Below are positions 3,757 through 13,738 of a DNA stretch of 35,416 nucleotides, one piece after another. Positions within the stretch are counted from its first letter, which is position 1, and each line of letters begins with the position of its first letter. The position numbers and the translations under genes were made by a program. Below the pieces are notes generated by a model, which saw only the letters and a program-made list of their open reading frames with translations, had not been told where the DNA came from and searched no databases. The stretch comes from Macrostomum lignano (Eukaryota), in assembly GCA_002269645.1 (NCBI GenBank), contig NIVC01000715.1:1-35416 (forward strand). The letters run 5' to 3'.

Positions 3757-4447
3757 TTAAACCTGTGACCAGACGCCGCCAACTGCGACTAGTGGCCTGC
3801 CTGGCTACTTCAAATAACTGCTTACCAGTACGTCTCTACTACGACTACGCCTACGACTGCTCTACTACTACTCTACTAATACTTGTACTACTACTACTTC
3901 ATTACTACTACTACGAGCTACTACTGCAACTACTAGTGCTACTACTACTGATAATCTAGCCTCAACTGATCTGCAGTGCCCAGTCGCCTGTGACCAGGGG
4001 CTGTGCAGGCGGCGATCTGTGACCAGACGCCGCCAACTGCAACTAGTGGCCTGCCTGGCGACTCAATTTATTTACTGTTTATGTAATAACATCTATTTAC
4101 TTGCACTTCTTTTTGAAAAGTTCTCAGTGCTCTGTTTTAATTTAATATTTGTTCTCAAATTCTACGGGCGTAAATAACTTATTTGTTGAACTTTTCAAGA
4201 TGCTTATTCATACACTTCTACGCTCTAAATCGTTTTTCTATAGCACCTAACATCTTTAATATTTTTTGTGCAAGGCTTTAAGCTGCCAATCTTTAACCAA
4301 TCAGCGTGCTTCAACTCACGTTTTTAATAATTATACGTACACATCTTTACTCAACTGCTCAGTGCACCCCAAAAGTAGCATATATATATTGAAATTATGT
4401 TACAATAACTTCACTGCCAATATATTTGTTTTTAAACCCGAATAAAT

Positions 4448-4488
4448 AAACCCTGACGAAGGCCCAGTCTGGGCCGAAATATCGGTTT
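4448..4488 (+). ncRNA. Minimal type I hammerhead ribozyme, copy 1
   Basis: AAACC-CTGACGA-A-GGCCCAG-T-CTGGGCC-GAAA-TA-TC-GGTTT: CUGANGA and GAAA core, stem I AAACC/GGTTT, palindromic stem II, palindromic mini stem III (ATAT), AUC cleavage triplet (cut after 4483). Confidence 0.85.
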
Positions 4489-6060
4489 TTTCGAACATTC
4501 GACAACTGGTAACCTTCAATATCTCCGAGTGCTGGTTTGCAGTTTCAAACTGCCTTATGAATATCTGTACCCAGGACCGGACTATTATTGAGGCTCGCCA
4601 TGTTTGTCAACAAATATTCGTATACGAGCTATTCTCCGCCAAAAATCTACTTGGGATAAGCAAGAGTACTATTTCTGCAGCTGATATTTAAGACGCACGA
4701 CACTACTACGACTACGGCTACGACTACGACTGTACTACTACTACTCTACTACCACTACTACTACTACTGCAACTACTAGTGCTACTACTACTGAAAATCT
4801 AGCTTCAACTGATCCGCAGTGCCCAGTCGCCTGTGACCAGGGGCTGTGCAGGCGGCGATCTGTGACCAGACGCCGCCAACTGCGACTAGTGGCCTGCCTG
4901 GCTACTTCAAATAACTGCTTACCAGTACGTCTCTACTACGACTACGCCTACGACTGCTCTACTACTACTCTACTAATACTTGTACTACTACTACTTCCAT
5001 TACTACTACTACGAGCTACTACTGCAACTACTAGTGCTACTACTACTGATAATCTAGCCTCAACTGATCTGCAGTGCCCAGTCGCCTGTGACCAGGGGCT
5101 GTGCAGGCGGCGATCTGTGACCAGACGCCGCCAACTGCGACTAGTGGCCTGCCTGGCTACTTCAAATAACTGCTTACCAGTACGTCTCTACTACGACTAC
5201 GCCTACGACTGCTCTACTACTACTCTACTAATACTTGTACTACTACTACTTCCATTACTACTACTACGAGCTACTACTGCAACTACTAGTGCTACTACTA
5301 CTGATAATCTAGCCTCAACTGATCTGCAGTGCCCAGTCGCCTGTGACCAGGGGCTGTGCAGGCGGCGATCTGTGACCAGACGCCGCCAACTGCGACTAGT
5401 GGCCTGCCTGGCTACTTCAAATAACTGCTTACCAGTACGTCTCTACTACGACTACGCCTACGACTGCTCTACTACTACTCTACTAATACTTGTACTACTA
5501 CTACTTCCATTACTACTACTACGAGCTACTACTGCAACTACTAGTGCTACTACTACTGATAATCTAGCCTCAACTGATCTGCAGTGCCCAGTCGCCTGTG
5601 ACCAGGGGCTGTGCAGGCGGCGATCTGTGACCAGACGCCGCCAACTGCAACTAGTGGCCTGCCTGGCGACTCAATTTATTTACTGTTTATGTAATAACAT
5701 CTATTTACTTGCACTTCTTTTGAAAAGTTCTCAGTGCTCTGTTTTAATTTAATATTTGTTCTCAATTCTACGGGCGTAAATAACTTATTTGTTGAACTTT
5801 TCAAGATGCTTATTCATACACTTCTACGCTCTAAATCTGTTTTTCTATAGCACCTAACATCTTTAATATTTTTTGTGCAAGGCTTTAAGCTGCCAATCTT
5901 TAACCAATCAGCGTGCTTCAACTCACGTTTTTAACTAATTATACGTACACATCTTTACTCAACACTGCTCAGTGCACCCCCAAAAGTAGCATATATATAT
6001 ATTGAAATTATGTTACAATAACTTCACTGCCAATATATTTGTTTTTAAACCCGAATAAAT

Positions 6061-6101
6061 AAACCCTGACGAAGGCCCAGTCTGGGCCGAAATATCGGTT
6101 T
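6061..6101 (+). ncRNA. Minimal type I hammerhead ribozyme, copy 2
   Basis: Identical motif; predicted cut after 6096. Confidence 0.85.
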
Positions 6102-11215: not shown

Positions 11216-12795
11216 TTTTCGAACATTCGACAACTGGTAACCTTCAATATCTTCCGAGTGCGTGGTTTGCAGTTTCAAACTGCCTTATGAATATCTGTAC
11301 CCAGGACCGGACTATTATTGAGGCTCGCCATGTTTGTCAACAAAATATCTTCGTATACGAGCTATTCTCCGCCAAAAATCTACTTGGGATAAACAAGAGT
11401 ACTATTTCTGCAGCTGAATATTTAAGACGCACGACACTACTACGACTACGGCTACGACTACGACTGTACTACTACTACTCTACTACCACTACTACTACTA
11501 CTGCAACTACTAGTGCTACTACTACTGAAAATCTAGCTTCAACTGATCCGCAGTGCCCAGTCGCCTGTGACCAGGGGCTGTGCAGGCGGCGATCTGTGAC
11601 CAGACGCCGCCAACTGCGACTAGTGGCCTGCCTGGCTACTTCAAATAACTGCTTACCAGTACGTCTCTACTACGACTACGCCTACGACTGCTCTACTACT
11701 ACTCTACTAATACTTGTACTACTACTACTTCCATTACTACTACTACGAGCTACTACTGCAACTACTAGTGCTACTACTACTGATAATCTAGCCTCAACTG
11801 ATCTGCAGTGCCCAGTCGCCTGTGACCAGGGGCTGTGCAGGCGGCGATCTGTGACCAGACGCCGCCAACTGCGACTAGTGGCCTGCCTGGCTACTTCAAA
11901 TAACTGCTTACCAGTACGTCTCTACTACGACTACGCCTACGACTGCTCTACTACTACTCTACTAATACTTGTACTACTACTACTTCCATTACTACTACTA
12001 CGAGCTACTACTGCAACTACTAGTGCTACTACTACTGATAATCTAGCCTCAACTGATCTGCAGTGCCCAGTCGCCTGTGACCAGGGGCTGTGCAGGCGGC
12101 GATCTGTGACCAGACGCCGCCAACTGCGACTAGTGGCCTGCCTGGCTACTTCAAATAACTGCTTACCAGTACGTCTCTACTACGACTACGCCTACGACTG
12201 CTCTACTACTACTCTACTAATACTTGTACTACTACTACTTCCATTACTACTACTACGAGCTACTACTGCAACTACTAGTGCTACTACTACTGATAATCTA
12301 GCCTCAACTGATCTGCAGTGCCCAGTCGCCTGTGACCAGGGGCTGTGCAGGCGGCGATCTGTGACCAGACGCCGCCAACTGCAACTAGTGGCCTGCCTGG
12401 CGACTCAATTTATTTACTGTTTATGTAATAACATCTATTTACTTGCACTTCTTTTTGAAAAGTTCTCAGTGCTCTGTTTTAATTTAATATTTGTTCTCAA
12501 TTCTACGGGCGTAAATAACTTATTTGTTGAACTTTTCAAGATGCTTATTCATACACTTCTACGCTCTAAATCTGTTTTTCTATAGCACCTAACATCTTTA
12601 ATATTTTTTGTGCAAGGCTTTAAGCTGCCAATCTTTAACCAATCAGCGTGCTTCAACTCACGTTTTTAACTAATTATACGTACACATCTTTACTCAACAC
12701 TGCTCAGTGCACCCCCAAAAGTAGCATATATATATATTGAAATTATGTTACAATAACTTCACTGCCAATATATTTGTTTTTAAACCCGAATAAAT

Positions 12796-12836
12796 AAACC
12801 CTGACGAAGGCCCAGTCTGGGCCGAAATATCGGTTT
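12796..12836 (+). ncRNA. Minimal type I hammerhead ribozyme, copy 6
   Basis: Identical motif; predicted cut after 12831. Confidence 0.85.
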
Positions 12837-12912
12837 TTTTCGAACATTCGACAACTGGTAACCTTCAATATCTTCCGAGTGCGTGGTTTGCAGTTTCAAA
12901 CTGCCTTATGAA

Positions 12913-13738
12913 TATCTATCTATCTATCTATCTATCTATCTATCTATCTATCTATCTATCTATCTATCTATCTATCTATCTATCTATCTATCTATCTATC
13001 TATCTATCTATCTATCTATCTATCTATCTATCTATCTATCTATCTATCTATCTATCTATCTATCTATCTATCTATCTATCTATCTATCTATCTATCTATC
13101 TATCTATCTATCTATCTATCTATCTATCTATCTATCTATCTATCTATCTATCTATCTATCTATCTATCTATCTATCTATCTATCTATCTATCTATCTATC
13201 TATCTATCTATCTATCTATCTATCTATCTATCTATCTATCTATCTATCTATCTATCTATCTATCTATCTATCTATCTATCTATCTATCTATCTATCTATC
13301 TATCTATCTATCTATCTATCTATCTATCTATCTATCTATCTATCTATCTATCTATCTATCTATCTATCTATCTATCTATCTATCTATCTATCTATCTATC
13401 TATCTATCTATCTATCTATCTATCTATCTATCTATCTATCTATCTATCTATCTATCTATCTATCTATCTATCTATCTATCTATCTATCTATCTATCTATC
13501 TATCTATCTATCTATCTATCTATCTATCTATCTATCTATCTATCTATCTATCTATCTATCTATCTATCTATCTATCTATCTATCTATCTATCTATCTATC
13601 TATCTATCTATCTATCTATCTATCTATCTATCTATCTATCTATCTATCTATCTATCTATCTATCTATCTATCTATCTATCTATCTATCTATCTATCTATC
13701 TATCTATCTATCTATCTATCTATCTACCTATCTATCTA
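12913..13738. repeat. (ATCT)n microsatellite, ~820 bp, nearly perfect
   Basis: Direct reading. Confidence 0.98.

What the first reader, a model, noticed from the sequence alone, without database searches (positions are those of the whole stretch)
3764..12917. Unusually large, nested retrozyme-like unit: a possibly new non-autonomous Penelope-dependent family
Described animal non-LTR retrozymes are generally a few hundred nt. This monomer is ~1.62 kb and contains a nested 255-bp subrepeat whose copy number varies (3 versus 4 full copies), plus structured hairpins and a long ORF. No RT or GIY-YIG coding sequence is recognisable, so mobility would have to be supplied in trans. The copies are near-identical (one S-to-N substitution at ~11394, other differences mostly 1-nt indels), implying recent amplification, either by rolling-circle-type reverse transcription of a circular RNA or by unequal crossing-over.
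Basis: partly seen in the sequence, partly recalled or inferred. Interest (0 to 1): 0.78.

Follow-up and report, generated by a model that had tools for sequence, protein, structure and literature searches.

The report
Penelope-type hammerhead repeat array, flatworm
About 9 kb of the flatworm Macrostomum lignano genome consists of five and a half head-to-tail copies of a 1.6-kb non-coding element that carries a Penelope-type self-cleaving ribozyme motif and sits inside an ATCT microsatellite; it is most likely an unusually large new family of a known kind of parasitic DNA that relies on the copying enzyme of Penelope-like retrotransposons.

Summary
Window 3763-12917 is one 5'-truncated copy plus five full head-to-tail copies of a 1621-bp unit; one copy is 1873 bp. 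Each unit holds nested 255-bp subrepeats and one hammerhead-like motif, and the array lies between (ATCT)n tracts.

The sequence is from Macrostomum lignano. The family occurs at three or more loci. One is a solo copy about 82% identical to the unit, on another contig, with a different 5' truncation point but the same 3' end. All copies lie inside (ATCT)n.

The ribozyme motif is not a canonical retrozyme hammerhead, and Rfam finds nothing. It matches the minimal hammerhead described for Penelope-like elements (PLEs): a bulged A before a 6-bp helix II, a 5-bp helix I, and a palindromic AUAU in place of helix III. None of 20,000 shuffles of the unit matched this descriptor. Near-identical cores lie about 175 nt downstream of RT/GIY-YIG-like ORFs in contigs from another animal.

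The element's 3' end is 86 nt past the predicted cut site. In the Anolis PLE PAc, reverse transcription starts 85-92 nt past its cut site.

Best reading: a non-autonomous PLE derivative inserted into (ATCT)n by target-primed reverse transcription. The 432-aa ORF is incidental. No autonomous partner, RNA circle or self-cleavage could be tested. Verdict: new member of a known kind, moderate interest.

The parts
1..3756 (.). Left (ATCT)n microsatellite, the target tract. It is interrupted at 775-1204 and 2748-3170 by duplicated pieces of host-gene intron plus a mini-exon (called 'X' here).
   Evidence: TRF; sequence; X mapping; the mini-exon reading TCTGAVTK matches paralogue P0007.
3757..3762 (+). 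6-nt filler TTAAAC between the microsatellite and the first unit, at the 5' junction of the array.
   Evidence: Sequence. The identical junction is present in L001.
3763..4566 (+). 5'-truncated first copy, unit positions 808-1621. It starts inside the loop of a subrepeat GC hairpin, next to the unit's own GATCTG.
   Evidence: BLAST tiling.
4567..6182 (+). Full unit 1 (1616 bp).
6183..8055 (+). Full unit 2 (1873 bp), with one extra 255-bp subrepeat. A 1-nt deletion in a G4 run truncates the ORF to 273 aa.
8056..9675 (+). Full unit 3 (1620 bp).
9676..11296 (+). Full unit 4, the 1621-bp reference unit in element coordinates. It starts GTACCCAGG and ends CTTATGAATATCT. Overall GC is 44.5%.
11297..12917 (+). 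Full unit 5. It ends exactly at unit position 1621 and runs into (ATCT)n with a 4-5 nt overlap.
9797..10784 (+). Subrepeat block of the reference unit: one diverged first copy (about 78% identity) followed by 255-bp copies. The subrepeats are ACT/CTA-rich, and each carries the hairpin GGCGGCG-N13-CGCCGCC. GC is 50.5%.
10781..11296 (+). AT-rich 3' region, 516 bp at 33.7% GC, pLTR-like. It holds the hammerhead and the 3' terminus. It is the best conserved part between the young units and the older copy L105.
11175..11215 (+). Minimal hammerhead motif of the reference unit. It reads helix I 5' strand AAACC, core CUGACGA, bulged A, helix II GGCCCA-GUC-UGGGCC, GAAA, UA, U, C, then the predicted cut after 11210, then helix I 3' strand GGUUU. 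Equivalent copies are at 4448-4488, 6061-6101, 7934-7974, 9554-9594 and 12796-12836.
11269..11283 (+). Small hairpin GCAGUU-UCA-AACUGC, 14-28 nt before the 3' terminus. The diverged copy keeps it with a U-A to U.G change.
   Evidence: Its stability is not above shuffled controls.
9666..10964 (+). 432-aa ORF, which starts 10 nt before the unit boundary. It has no homologues outside this repeat family and is not conserved in the older copy, so it is judged incidental.
12913..13738 (.). Right (TATC)n microsatellite, 99% pure.

Best explanation
The array is a non-autonomous retroelement family of Macrostomum lignano derived from a Penelope-like element (PLE).

Unit structure. Each 1621-bp unit has a short 5' segment, a variable block of 255-bp subrepeats where a PLE would carry its ORF, and a 516-bp AT-rich pLTR-like 3' region. 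The 3' region holds a PLE-type minimal hammerhead 86 nt before the element's 3' terminus.

Proposed mechanism.
- The array is transcribed on the + strand as a multi-unit RNA. Read-through from the host gene upstream, which lies on the same strand, is possible.
- A PLE RT/GIY-YIG protein supplied in trans binds the region around the hammerhead.
- The protein nicks an (ATCT)n tract and starts reverse transcription internally at unit position 1621.
- It copies back through one or several units and stops early, leaving a 5'-truncated first copy.
- Unequal crossing-over and slippage then change unit and subrepeat numbers.
- The hammerhead may process the multimer as a dimer or with protein assistance. 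It need not create the template end.

Shown here: the anatomy, the hammerhead motif architecture, dispersed copies with a shared 3' end and different 5' ends, the (ATCT)n context, and the absence of coding capacity.

Inferred only: transcription, the trans-acting PLE, TPRT, and any self-cleavage.
For: Hammerhead motif.
- There is one descriptor hit per unit, on the + strand only. None of 20,000 dinucleotide shuffles of the unit gave a hit on either strand.
- The MFE fold of the 67-nt segment is the three-way junction, with a 5-bp helix I plus a distal 4 bp and a 6-bp helix II.
- The architecture has a bulged nucleotide 5' of stem II, a short helix I, a long helix II, and no or only a palindromic helix III. 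This is the description of PLE min-HHRs in the flatworm S. mansoni and other animals (PMC4209133).

Same core in real PLE contexts.
- A degenerate version of the core found 102 metagenome contigs from an animal host.
- In L093, L026 and L045 the motif lies about 175 nt after the end of an ORF with an RT C-terminus and the sequence VYRVPCDCGSVYVGETGR. This has two Cys inside the GIY-YIG core, the PLE EN hallmark quoted in PMC8557442.
- Helix I differs between families but stays complementary: AAACC/GGUUU, GCAA/UUGC, AACAA/UUGUU and GGC/GCC.

Geometry of the 3' end.
- The genomic 3' end is 86 nt after the predicted cut site at every resolved 3' end: 12831 to 12917 in the window, plus L002 and L105.
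- In the Anolis PLE PAc the cut site is at +26 and reverse transcription starts at +111 to +118, which is 85-92 nt (PMC11167929).
- In the metagenome PLE family, copy ends cluster about 55-64 and 90-94 nt after the cut.

Dispersal and ends.
- Locus A is the window and L001. Locus B is L002, on NIVC01000001.1. Locus C is L105, on NIVC01001007.1.
- L105 is a solo copy 82% identical to the unit, with unrelated flanks.
- The 5' ends differ (unit positions 808, 559 and 397), while the 3' end is the same.
- All copies lie in (ATCT)n. PLEs are known for a microsatellite insertion bias, 5' truncation and partial tandems (PMC8557442).

No RT/EN coding sequence is present.
Against: - No autonomous M. 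lignano PLE sharing the hammerhead or 3' region was found. The tools gave no access to the whole genome, so this could not be looked for.
- Rfam's hammerhead models give no hit, even for a 121-nt query at E<=10.
- Only three loci are known. Loci A and B have 5' junctions in the same phase of the subrepeat, each explicable as a 6-nt indel of one ancestral junction. M. lignano is partly duplicated, so A and B could be one event copied by genome duplication. The independent events would then be two.
- Inside L002, the solo copy and the array start share a microsatellite variant, which shows local duplication by unequal exchange.
- The typical PLE inverted 5'-truncated partner copies are absent, with no minus-strand hits. 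The 30-40-bp 'tail' variants are also absent.
- Target-site duplications cannot be read inside a microsatellite.
- Cleavage activity and transcription are untested.
- The ORFs next to the metagenome hammerheads give only a weak Pfam RVT_1 hit (E=0.027) and no PDB hit. Calling them PLE ORFs rests on motif reading.
Confidence: 0.6

Rival explanations
1. Classical non-LTR retrozyme life cycle. The multimeric transcript is cut by the hammerhead into 1621-nt monomers. A tRNA ligase circularises them. A PLE RT then copies the circle by rolling-circle reverse transcription, which creates the tandem array in one step.
For: - The array is head-to-tail, with one hammerhead per unit.
- The units are near-identical.
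- GC is 44.5%, within the low-GC range reported for animal retrozymes.
- Retrozymes are argued to derive from PLE pLTRs.
Against: - The hammerhead is the PLE minimal type. This type is reported to have low or no activity as a single motif and to need protein in PAc. Motifs 1.6 kb apart are poorly placed to dimerise.
- The predicted circle is only 48% paired, whereas retrozyme circles are described as highly self-paired.
- The unit is 1.7 to 4 times larger than any reported retrozyme.
- All resolved genomic 3' ends lie 86 nt past the cut site, which a circular template does not predict but PLE internal initiation does.
- No RNA data were available.
Confidence: 0.15
2. An immobile macrosatellite. 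A fossil PLE end was captured next to a 255-bp minisatellite inside an unstable (ATCT)n tract and was amplified only by unequal crossing-over. The other loci are copies made by segmental or whole-genome duplication.
For: - The tract is clearly recombination-prone. Host-gene piece X is duplicated with a ~1.97-kb period to the left.
- L002 carries a locally duplicated block of microsatellite, junction and truncated unit.
- Unit and subrepeat numbers vary.
- The 5' junctions of loci A and B can be derived from one ancestral junction.
- All four L001 units differ from the window units at the same (AT)n run, which suggests concerted evolution.
Against: - L105 is a diverged solo copy on another contig. 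Its flanks are unrelated, its 5' end is different, and its 3' end is identical.
- Every microsatellite between copies is flanked by unit position 1621 on its left and position 559 or 808 on its right. In-situ expansion of an internal ATCT would instead give 1621|1 or 807|808.
- The 3' end sits at the distance from the hammerhead expected for PLE initiation.
Confidence: 0.15
3. A SINE-like or SVA-like passenger of a LINE whose RNA ends in (AUCU)n. The right-hand microsatellite would be the element's own 3' tail, and the hammerhead would be an inert captured fragment.
For: - The element ends in ATCT and merges with (ATCT)n.
- A small hairpin lies 14-28 nt before the end. This arrangement resembles the stringent 3'-end recognition of LINE/SINE pairs, which is general knowledge and was not tested here.
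Against: - Both flanks are (ATCT)n at all three loci, not only the 3' flank.
- No LINE similarity was found in any held sequence.
- The other sequence embedded in the tract (X) is host-gene sequence, not a retroelement. It shares no similarity with the unit.
- The spacing between hammerhead and terminus fits PLEs.
Confidence: 0.06
4. A tandemly duplicated protein-coding gene for a Thr/Leu/Cys-rich repetitive protein (the 432-aa ORF). The period of 255 bp equals 85 codons.
For: - The ORF is open through the subrepeats, and 255 is divisible by 3.
- NCBI gene models overlap the repeats: P0001, P0002 and P0008.
Against: - There is no Pfam domain above threshold.
- In searches of 5.8 billion clustered and 1.84 billion representative proteins, the only hits are ORFs of this same repeat family.
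- In the older copy the subrepeat is 214 bp, which is not a multiple of 3, and the frame is lost.
- ACT/CTA/TAC repeats contain no stop codon in any frame, which favours chance ORFs.
- The ORF is frameshifted in several units.
Confidence: 0.02
5. An assembly artefact: a collapsed or expanded repeat in a long-read assembly.
For: - Differences between units are mostly 1-nt indels, typical of long-read consensus errors.
- L001 has a 530-N gap inside its array.
Against: - The same structure is recovered in independent contigs.
- Units have different lengths.
- A transposon with an 8-bp target duplication sits inside one unit of L002.
- A diverged solo copy exists.
Confidence: 0.02

Closest known systems
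Minimal hammerheads in the pLTRs of Penelope-like elements (Cervera & de la Pena 2014, PMC4209133; the Anolis PLE PAc, Frangieh et al. 2024, PMC11167929)
   Same: [quoted passage not shown]
- The motif is located close to the element's 3' end.
- The distance from cut site to 3' terminus is 86 nt here and 85-92 nt in PAc.
- Head-to-tail partial tandems, 5' truncation and insertion into microsatellites.
   Different: - There is no RT/GIY-YIG ORF. A 255-bp minisatellite block stands in its place.
- Five or more full units, rather than one full copy preceded by a partial one.
- No inverted partner copy and no 30-40-bp tail variant.
- The target is (ATCT)n, rather than the (TA)n, (CA)n or AT-rich sites reported.
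Animal non-LTR retrozymes (Cervera & de la Pena 2020, PMC7229834; Li et al. 2026, bioRxiv 10.64898/2026.07.22.740005)
   Same: - Non-coding head-to-tail repeats with one type I hammerhead per monomer.
- Low GC content.
- No LTR, PBS or PPT.
- Presumed dependence on PLEs.
   Different: - The monomer is 1621 bp, against 170-400 nt (maximum consensus 972 bp).
- The hammerhead is the PLE minimal variant, not the canonical one with loop-loop contacts.
- The predicted RNA is not highly self-paired.
- The circular RNA is unverified.
- The unit has an internal variable-number subrepeat.
Schistosome SMalpha/Sjalpha SINE-like elements and hammerhead-bearing W-elements (PMC8490949)
   Same: - Repeats from flatworms that carry type I hammerheads with a very short stem III.
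- They occur both as tandem arrays and as dispersed copies.
- Mobility is inferred from dispersed copies.
   Different: - Those are units of a few hundred bp with Rfam-detectable canonical-like hammerheads.
- No sequence similarity to them was tested or seen.
- This element is 1.6 kb and confined to a microsatellite.
SVA elements of hominids (composite SINE-VNTR-Alu; cited from general knowledge, not tested here)
   Same: A composite non-autonomous retroelement with an internal variable-number tandem repeat, mobilised in trans. This is an analogy of organisation only.
   Different: SVA is mobilised by L1, has a poly(A) tail, has no ribozyme and forms no tandem arrays of whole elements.
Newt satellite 2 and cave-cricket pDo500 hammerhead satellites (PMC7229834, PMC2837043)
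   Same: Satellite-like tandem arrays whose monomers carry a hammerhead with a weak helix III that works as a dimer.
   Different: Their monomers are about 330-500 bp, with very high copy numbers and canonical loop-loop contacts.

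Membership tests
Hammerhead ribozyme, PLE minimal type (min-HHR) | Conserved core CUGANGA ... GAAA ... U-H cleavage dinucleotide, in the order expected for a type I motif | tested here: met
   CUGACGA / GAAA / U-C is present in all six units and in the diverged copy L105.
Hammerhead ribozyme, PLE minimal type (min-HHR) | Helix I formed by the bases immediately 5' of the core and 3' of the cut site. Helix II is a hairpin between the two core halves, long (6-8 bp), with an unpaired base at its 5' end. 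| tested here: met
   The MFE fold of the 67-nt segment gives AAACC/GGUUU plus CGAA/UUCG, and GGCCCA-GUC-UGGGCC preceded by a bulged A. None of 20,000 shuffles satisfied the descriptor.
Hammerhead ribozyme, PLE minimal type (min-HHR) | Helix III absent or reduced to a short palindrome that can pair between two copies | tested here: met
   A15.1-U-A-U16.1 reads AUAU, which is self-complementary. The metagenome PLE family has ACGU, or ACAUGU in L062, at the same place. RNAcofold did not return this dimer as its MFE, so the pairing is read from the sequence and not predicted.
Hammerhead ribozyme (Rfam families Hammerhead_1/3/II/HH9/HH10) | Match to a curated covariance model | tested here: not met
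   No hit at gathering score on the window, none at E<=10 on 9.3 kb, and none at E<=10 on 121 nt. This is expected for a motif without helix III and with an inserted core base, but it is still a negative result.
Hammerhead ribozyme | Self-cleavage at the predicted site | not testable with these tools
   This needs in vitro transcription of dimeric constructs, with and without PLE protein, or mapping of RNA ends.
Animal non-LTR retrozyme | Head-to-tail tandem repeats, each monomer carrying a type I hammerhead, with no LTR/PBS/PPT and no coding capacity | tested here: met
   The ORF has no homologues and is not conserved.
Animal non-LTR retrozyme | Monomer of about 150-450 bp (largest published consensus 972 bp) | tested here: not met
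   Units are 1616-1873 bp, against the published sizes.
Animal non-LTR retrozyme | Canonical type I hammerhead with loop 1-loop 2 contacts. PMC7229834 separates these from the atypical minimal variants of PLEs. | tested here: not met
   The motif is of the PLE minimal type and is not seen by Rfam.
Animal non-LTR retrozyme | Low GC content (below 45-50%) | tested here: met
   44.5% overall.
Animal non-LTR retrozyme | Monomer RNA highly self-paired and expressed as a circular RNA | tested here: inconclusive
   The circular MFE is -385.6 kcal/mol with z = -3.0, but only 48% of bases are paired. Expression and circularity cannot be tested here.
Penelope-like element (autonomous) | Single ORF encoding an RT and a GIY-YIG endonuclease | tested here: not met
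   The ORF list, Pfam and tblastn with RT/GIY-YIG-like ORFs found nothing in the window, L001, L002 or L105.
Penelope-like element derivative (non-autonomous) | Hammerhead near the 3' end, with the element terminus (the RT initiation site) tens of nt downstream of the cut site (85-92 nt in PAc) | tested here: met
   86 nt at every resolved 3' end. The metagenome PLE family shows modes at about 55-64 and 90-94 nt.
Penelope-like element derivative (non-autonomous) | Variable 5' truncation with a constant 3' end, and partial tandems | tested here: met
   5' ends are at unit positions 808 (window and L001), 559 (L002) and 397 (L105), and all 3' ends are at 1621. Caveat: positions 808 and 559 are in the same subrepeat phase.
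Penelope-like element derivative (non-autonomous) | Insertion bias for microsatellites | tested here: met
   All three loci are embedded in (ATCT)n on both sides. The bias is described in PMC8557442.
Penelope-like element derivative (non-autonomous) | Adjacent inverted 5'-truncated copy and/or an optional 30-40-bp tail | tested here: not met
   There are no minus-strand unit matches in any held M. lignano sequence, and there is a single 3' end position. These features are frequent in PLEs but not obligatory.
Penelope-like element derivative (non-autonomous) | An autonomous PLE in the same genome that shares the hammerhead and 3' region | not testable with these tools
   No eukaryotic genome search was available.

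The most novel reading that the evidence does not exclude
The element is an active 'giant retrozyme'. Its multimeric transcript is cut by the minimal hammerheads, as dimers or with PLE protein help, into 1.6-kb monomers. These monomers circularise and accumulate. That would make it the largest ribozyme-processed circular RNA of an animal retroelement. It would carry a fast-evolving internal minisatellite and be aimed specifically at (ATCT)n microsatellites by a so far undescribed flatworm PLE lineage.
Probability: 0.15. Interest if true: 0.6.

Novelty: new member of a known kind. Interest (0 to 1): 0.4.

Why it matters
If the reading holds, this family extends the size range of hammerhead-bearing non-autonomous PLE derivatives by about two-fold. 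It also shows that such elements can carry an internal variable-number repeat.

The family gives three natural data points that agree with the biochemical finding that PLE reverse transcription starts about 85-92 nt downstream of the hammerhead cut site. This makes it a compact candidate template for studying PLE template recognition.

It suggests a PLE lineage in a laboratory flatworm, one with established transgenesis, that targets (ATCT)n tracts.

For genome annotation, it explains three spurious M. lignano gene models (P0001, P0002 and P0008).

The idea that animal retrozymes derive from PLEs is already in the literature, so this adds no new principle.

Tried and rejected
- Rfam at gathering score, at E<=10 on 9.3 kb, and at E<=10 on 121 nt gave no hit. 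The motif had to be judged by a descriptor with shuffles and by its fold.
- Exact-product look-ups of window ORFs (432 aa, the GPCR, 140 aa) were not on record.
- A search with the flanking GPCR, meant to locate the window and find an empty site, found no M. lignano protein. The best hit was 45% identical, from an unrelated assembly.
- A search with the N-terminal, non-repeat part of P0002 found paralogues, but they exist only as UniRef entries without contigs. No empty-site comparison was possible.
- 'X', the sequence interrupting the left microsatellite, was first suspected to be a retroelement with an (ATCT)n tail. This was rejected: it has no similarity to the unit and contains a mini-exon of the host gene.
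- In-situ expansion of the unit's own ATCT into the microsatellite was rejected, because the microsatellites between copies are flanked by unit position 1621 on one side and 559 or 808 on the other.
- RNAcofold of two hammerhead segments did not return the helix III dimer.
- Pfam and PDB sequence searches on the ORFs next to the metagenome hammerheads gave only RVT_1 at E=0.027.
- The supplementary PLE consensus sequences of PMC8557442 are not held. PMC5785218 is not held.
- No tRNA gene was found in the window.

Full report
**Observation.** The repeat is real and sits at the stated coordinates. TRF reports nested 255-bp repeats in five blocks, at 3.7 copies each and 4.7 in the block 6351-7544. 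The blocks lie between an (ATCT)n tract at 1-3756 and a (TATC)n tract at 12913-13738. Repeat families confirm 255-bp spacing inside a ~1621-bp higher-order period.

I re-cut the unit at the array's right end, so that element coordinate 1 is GTACCCAGG and coordinate 1621 is the last T of GAATATCT. BLAST tiling then gives the following:
- 3763-4566: unit positions 808-1621, a 5'-truncated copy.
- 4567-6182, 6183-8055 (1873 bp), 8056-9675, 9676-11296 and 11297-12917: five full units.

**Anatomy of a unit (reference 9676-11296).** The first ~120 bp are unique sequence. A block of ACT/CTA-rich subrepeats follows. Its first copy is diverged (~78% identity), and each copy holds the hairpin GGCGGCG-N13-CGCCGCC. 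A 516-bp AT-rich region (33.7% GC) closes the unit. Overall GC is 44.5%.

One forward frame is open for 432 aa. It has no Pfam domain above threshold. Two very large protein searches returned only ORFs of this same repeat family. In the older copy described below, the subrepeat is 214 bp and the frame is lost. I regard the ORF as incidental. ACT/CTA/TAC repeats contain no stop codon in any frame, and 255 is a multiple of 3.

**The ribozyme motif.** Each unit has exactly one copy of CTGACGAAGGCCCAGTCTGGGCCGAAATATC: six found, 0 expected. A loose core pattern alone is not rare; about 0.7 are expected per window. I therefore tested a fuller descriptor: the core, an optional bulge, a helix II of at least 5 bp, GAAA, 0-6 nt, U-H, and a helix I of at least 4 bp. 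It matches the unit once, on the + strand only, and matched none of 20,000 dinucleotide shuffles on either strand.

The MFE fold of the 67-nt segment is the expected junction:
- Helix I is AAACC/GGUUU, extended by CGAA/UUCG.
- Helix II is GGCCCA-GUC-UGGGCC.
- Both core strands are unpaired.
- There is an extra A between A9 and helix II.
- Helix III is reduced to A-UA-U, the palindrome AUAU.

Rfam does not detect the motif at any threshold.

Cervera & de la Pena describe the minimal hammerheads of PLE pLTRs in Schistosoma and other animals in these terms: a long helix II, a short helix I, an unpaired base at the 5' end of stem II, and helix III absent or a small palindrome that works through dimers. 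The canonical type I hammerhead of non-LTR retrozymes is a different class, and PMC7229834 makes that distinction explicitly.

**Independent check of the PLE link.** A degenerate form of the core (CTGANGAAGGCCCNNNNNGGGCCGAAA) was scanned against JGI metagenome contigs. It returned 102 contigs, mostly from a few samples and evidently from an animal host. The dominant family reads CUGAAGA-A-GGCCC-UUUUG-GGGCC-GAAA-CG-UU|UUGC. This is the same layout, with ACGU as the palindrome.

Helix I differs between variants but stays complementary: GCAA/UUGC, AACAA/UUGUU, and GGC/GCC in L062, against AAACC/GGUUU here. Because the scan pattern fixed the core and helix II, only the flanks are independent evidence.

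In L093, L026 and L045 the motif lies about 175 nt after the end of an ORF. That ORF has an RT C-terminal region and the sequence VYRVPCDCGSVYVGETGR...EH. [quoted passage not shown] L100 has an RYVDD-containing ORF just downstream of a hammerhead. Pfam gives only a weak RVT_1 hit for it (E=0.027), and PDB sequence searches give nothing. Identifying these ORFs as PLE ORFs therefore rests on motif reading.

**Organism and other loci.** The unit ORF matches two annotated hypothetical proteins of Macrostomum lignano.
- L001 (NIVC01002743.1) is the same locus as the window. It has the identical left junction ...CTATTTAAACC|TGTGACC, the same interruptions in the left microsatellite, and 99.1% identity over 7.3 kb. 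Its array, however, has three full units and then a 530-N gap.
- L002 (NIVC01000001.1, ~2.2 Mb) is a different arrangement inside more than 12 kb of (ATCT)n. A solo 5'-truncated copy (unit 559-1621) has five private substitutions in its last 516 bp. After 2.3 kb of microsatellite comes an array of a truncated copy plus three units. One of those units is split by a 1.2-kb transposon with CAGTGTTGGGCA inverted termini and an 8-bp duplication.
- L105 (NIVC01001007.1) was reached through P0008, the one distant hit of the exhaustive protein search. It is a solo copy covering unit positions 397-1621 at 82% identity. It lies between (TCTA)n and (TATC)n, and its flanks are unrelated to the other loci. 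Its hammerhead core is intact, with one mismatch in helix II. The AT-rich region is 86% identical overall, and mostly 88-100% in 50-nt windows over its central ~390 bp; the last 86 nt are the most diverged, at about 74-78%.

**Ends and target.** Every resolved 3' end is at the same base...GAATATCT|ATCT in the window and twice in L002, and ...GCATATCT|ATCT in L105. The 5' ends differ: position 808 with a TTAAAC filler (window and L001), position 559 (L002), and position 397 in a different part of the subrepeat (L105).

One caveat applies. Positions 808 and 559 are in the same phase of the subrepeat, at the unit's own GATCTG. Each can be derived from a seamless (CTAT)nCTGTGACC junction by a 6-nt indel. 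Loci A and B may therefore share one origin, or may both reflect microhomology with the target.

No microsatellite between copies is flanked as 1621|1 or 807|808. This argues against in-situ expansion of an internal ATCT. No inverted copies exist.

**Geometry.** The 3' terminus lies 86 nt after the predicted cut site (12831 to 12917). It is preceded by a small hairpin, GCAGUU-UCA-AACUGC. L105 keeps this hairpin with a U-A to U.G change, but it is no more stable than shuffled controls.

Frangieh et al. showed for the Anolis PLE PAc that reverse transcription starts internally in the RNA, in a stem-loop at +111 to +118. The hammerhead cut site is at +26, so the distance is 85-92 nt. These start sites define the ends of genomic copies. 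The hammerhead is protein-assisted and dispensable for insertion in vitro, and the template is thought to be a multi-copy transcript.

In the metagenome PLE family, copy ends cluster about 55-64 and 90-94 nt after the cut site. The two modes are about 35 nt apart, like the PLE 'tail'. The flatworm element fits this geometry closely.

**Mechanism.** The proposed mechanism has five steps.
1. The array is transcribed on the + strand as a multimer. In L001 it lies downstream of, and on the same strand as, exons of an ARM/SAM-type gene, and one NCBI model (P0002) even joins them. This step is inferred.
2. A PLE RT/EN supplied in trans binds the region from the hammerhead to the terminus. This step is inferred.
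3. The enzyme nicks (ATCT)n and initiates at unit position 1621. This is inferred from the constant 3' end, the (ATCT)n context and the 86-nt spacing.
4. It copies one or more units and stops early. The 5'-truncated first copies are observed.
5. Unequal exchange and slippage reshape the arrays. The observations here are variable unit and subrepeat numbers, a locally duplicated junction block in L002, and a possibly concerted (AT)n difference between L001 and the window.

A rolling-circle step on a cleaved circular monomer is possible but not needed. Several facts make it less attractive:
- The hammerheads are 1.6 kb apart.
- The motif is of the weakly active minimal type.
- The predicted circle is only 48% paired.
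- The 3' end does not coincide with the cut site.

**Comparison and novelty.** The element works like a non-autonomous PLE derivative and resembles non-LTR retrozymes in organisation. It fails two defining retrozyme features that I could test, monomer size and a canonical hammerhead. A third, a highly self-paired RNA, is inconclusive. It lacks the ORF that defines an autonomous PLE.

The derivation of animal retrozymes from PLE pLTRs has already been proposed. I therefore rate this a new member of a known kind. Its notable quantitative features are a 1.6-kb unit, an internal variable-number repeat and (ATCT)n specificity.

**Limits.** Whole-genome copy number, the autonomous partner, transcription, circularity and cleavage could not be tested. 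Only three loci are known, and two of them may not be independent.

Noticed in passing
window 775-1204 and 2748-3170 (also L001 12623-13050 and 14587-15014): The left (ATCT)n tract is interrupted twice by the same composite, X positions 114-266 followed by X 1-266, with a period of about 1.97 kb. X is not a transposon. It contains a mini-exon reading TCTGAVTK(LDFS), which continues the exon ...AAERIKTEFR of an ARM/SAM-type host gene (paralogue P0007). The downstream SAM-domain exons are not in the window, so this gene copy may be truncated.
   Followed up: partly
L002 7514-8744: A 1.2-kb non-autonomous DNA transposon is inserted inside one repeat unit. Its terminal inverted repeats are CAGTGTTGGGCA / TGCCCAACACTG, and it has an 8-bp target duplication, CTTACCAG, which is hAT-like.
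   Followed up: partly
L003-L104 (metagenome contigs MKWU01..., JGIcombinedJ30088, Ga0209544): An abundant PLE-hammerhead family from an unidentified animal host exists mostly as solo fragments of about 110-145 bp with sharp ends. The fragments start 25-30 nt before CUGA and end about 55-64 or 90-94 nt after the cut site. This would fit reverse transcription initiating at the first site after a transcription start, but I did not pursue it. Only 7 of the 102 contigs show any similarity to the RT/GIY-YIG-like ORFs.
   Followed up: partly
window 20949-22058 (- strand): An intact single-exon rhodopsin-family GPCR ORF (Pfam 7tm_1, E=3.6e-43) has no close match among M. lignano proteins in the 5.8-billion-protein collection. 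The best hit is 45% identical, so the gene appears to be unannotated.
   Followed up: partly
window 24612-24905 and 25326-26648 (- strand); 29509-29940 (+ strand): There is a guanylate/adenylate cyclase catalytic-domain fragment (Pfam E=4e-14) next to a 440-aa ORF without Pfam hits, and a glycosyltransferase DXD-motif fragment. These are probably exons of host genes.
   Followed up: no
window 16924-17472 (+ strand): A 182-aa ORF ends in ...HSLRRGGATWA..., which resembles the catalytic region of tyrosine recombinases of the Crypton/DIRS type. It has no Pfam hit at E<=0.01, so the resemblance rests on memory only.
   Followed up: no
window 18182-19934, 20386-20709, 22551-23087, 28401-29255, 30055-31178, 31985-32298: The right flank is dense with other tandem repeats: a GC-rich 19-bp minisatellite (93 copies), a 21-bp repeat, (TGTC)n, a 23-bp repeat (37 copies), (ACAGACAG)n and a 35-bp repeat. 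L001 and L105 are similarly rich. A 22-24-bp minisatellite (CCCTGAAGGATCGGTGGGGGAC-like) is shared by L105 2647-2864 and L001 5652-6381, in opposite orientation.
   Followed up: no
L001 units compared with window units (alignment columns 326-327 of the 516-bp tail): All four L001 units lack one AT of an (AT)n run that five of the six window copies have, although the two contigs represent the same locus. This is either concerted evolution between alleles or homeologues, or a polishing artefact of the long-read assembly.
   Followed up: no
window 3757-3762 compared with 11163-11170: At the array's 5' junction, the filler and adjoining bases (ATTTAAACC) repeat the 8-mer TTTAAACC that lies just upstream of the hammerhead in every unit. 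This could be a template-switch remnant or chance, at about 2-3% for an 8-mer in 1.6 kb.
   Followed up: no
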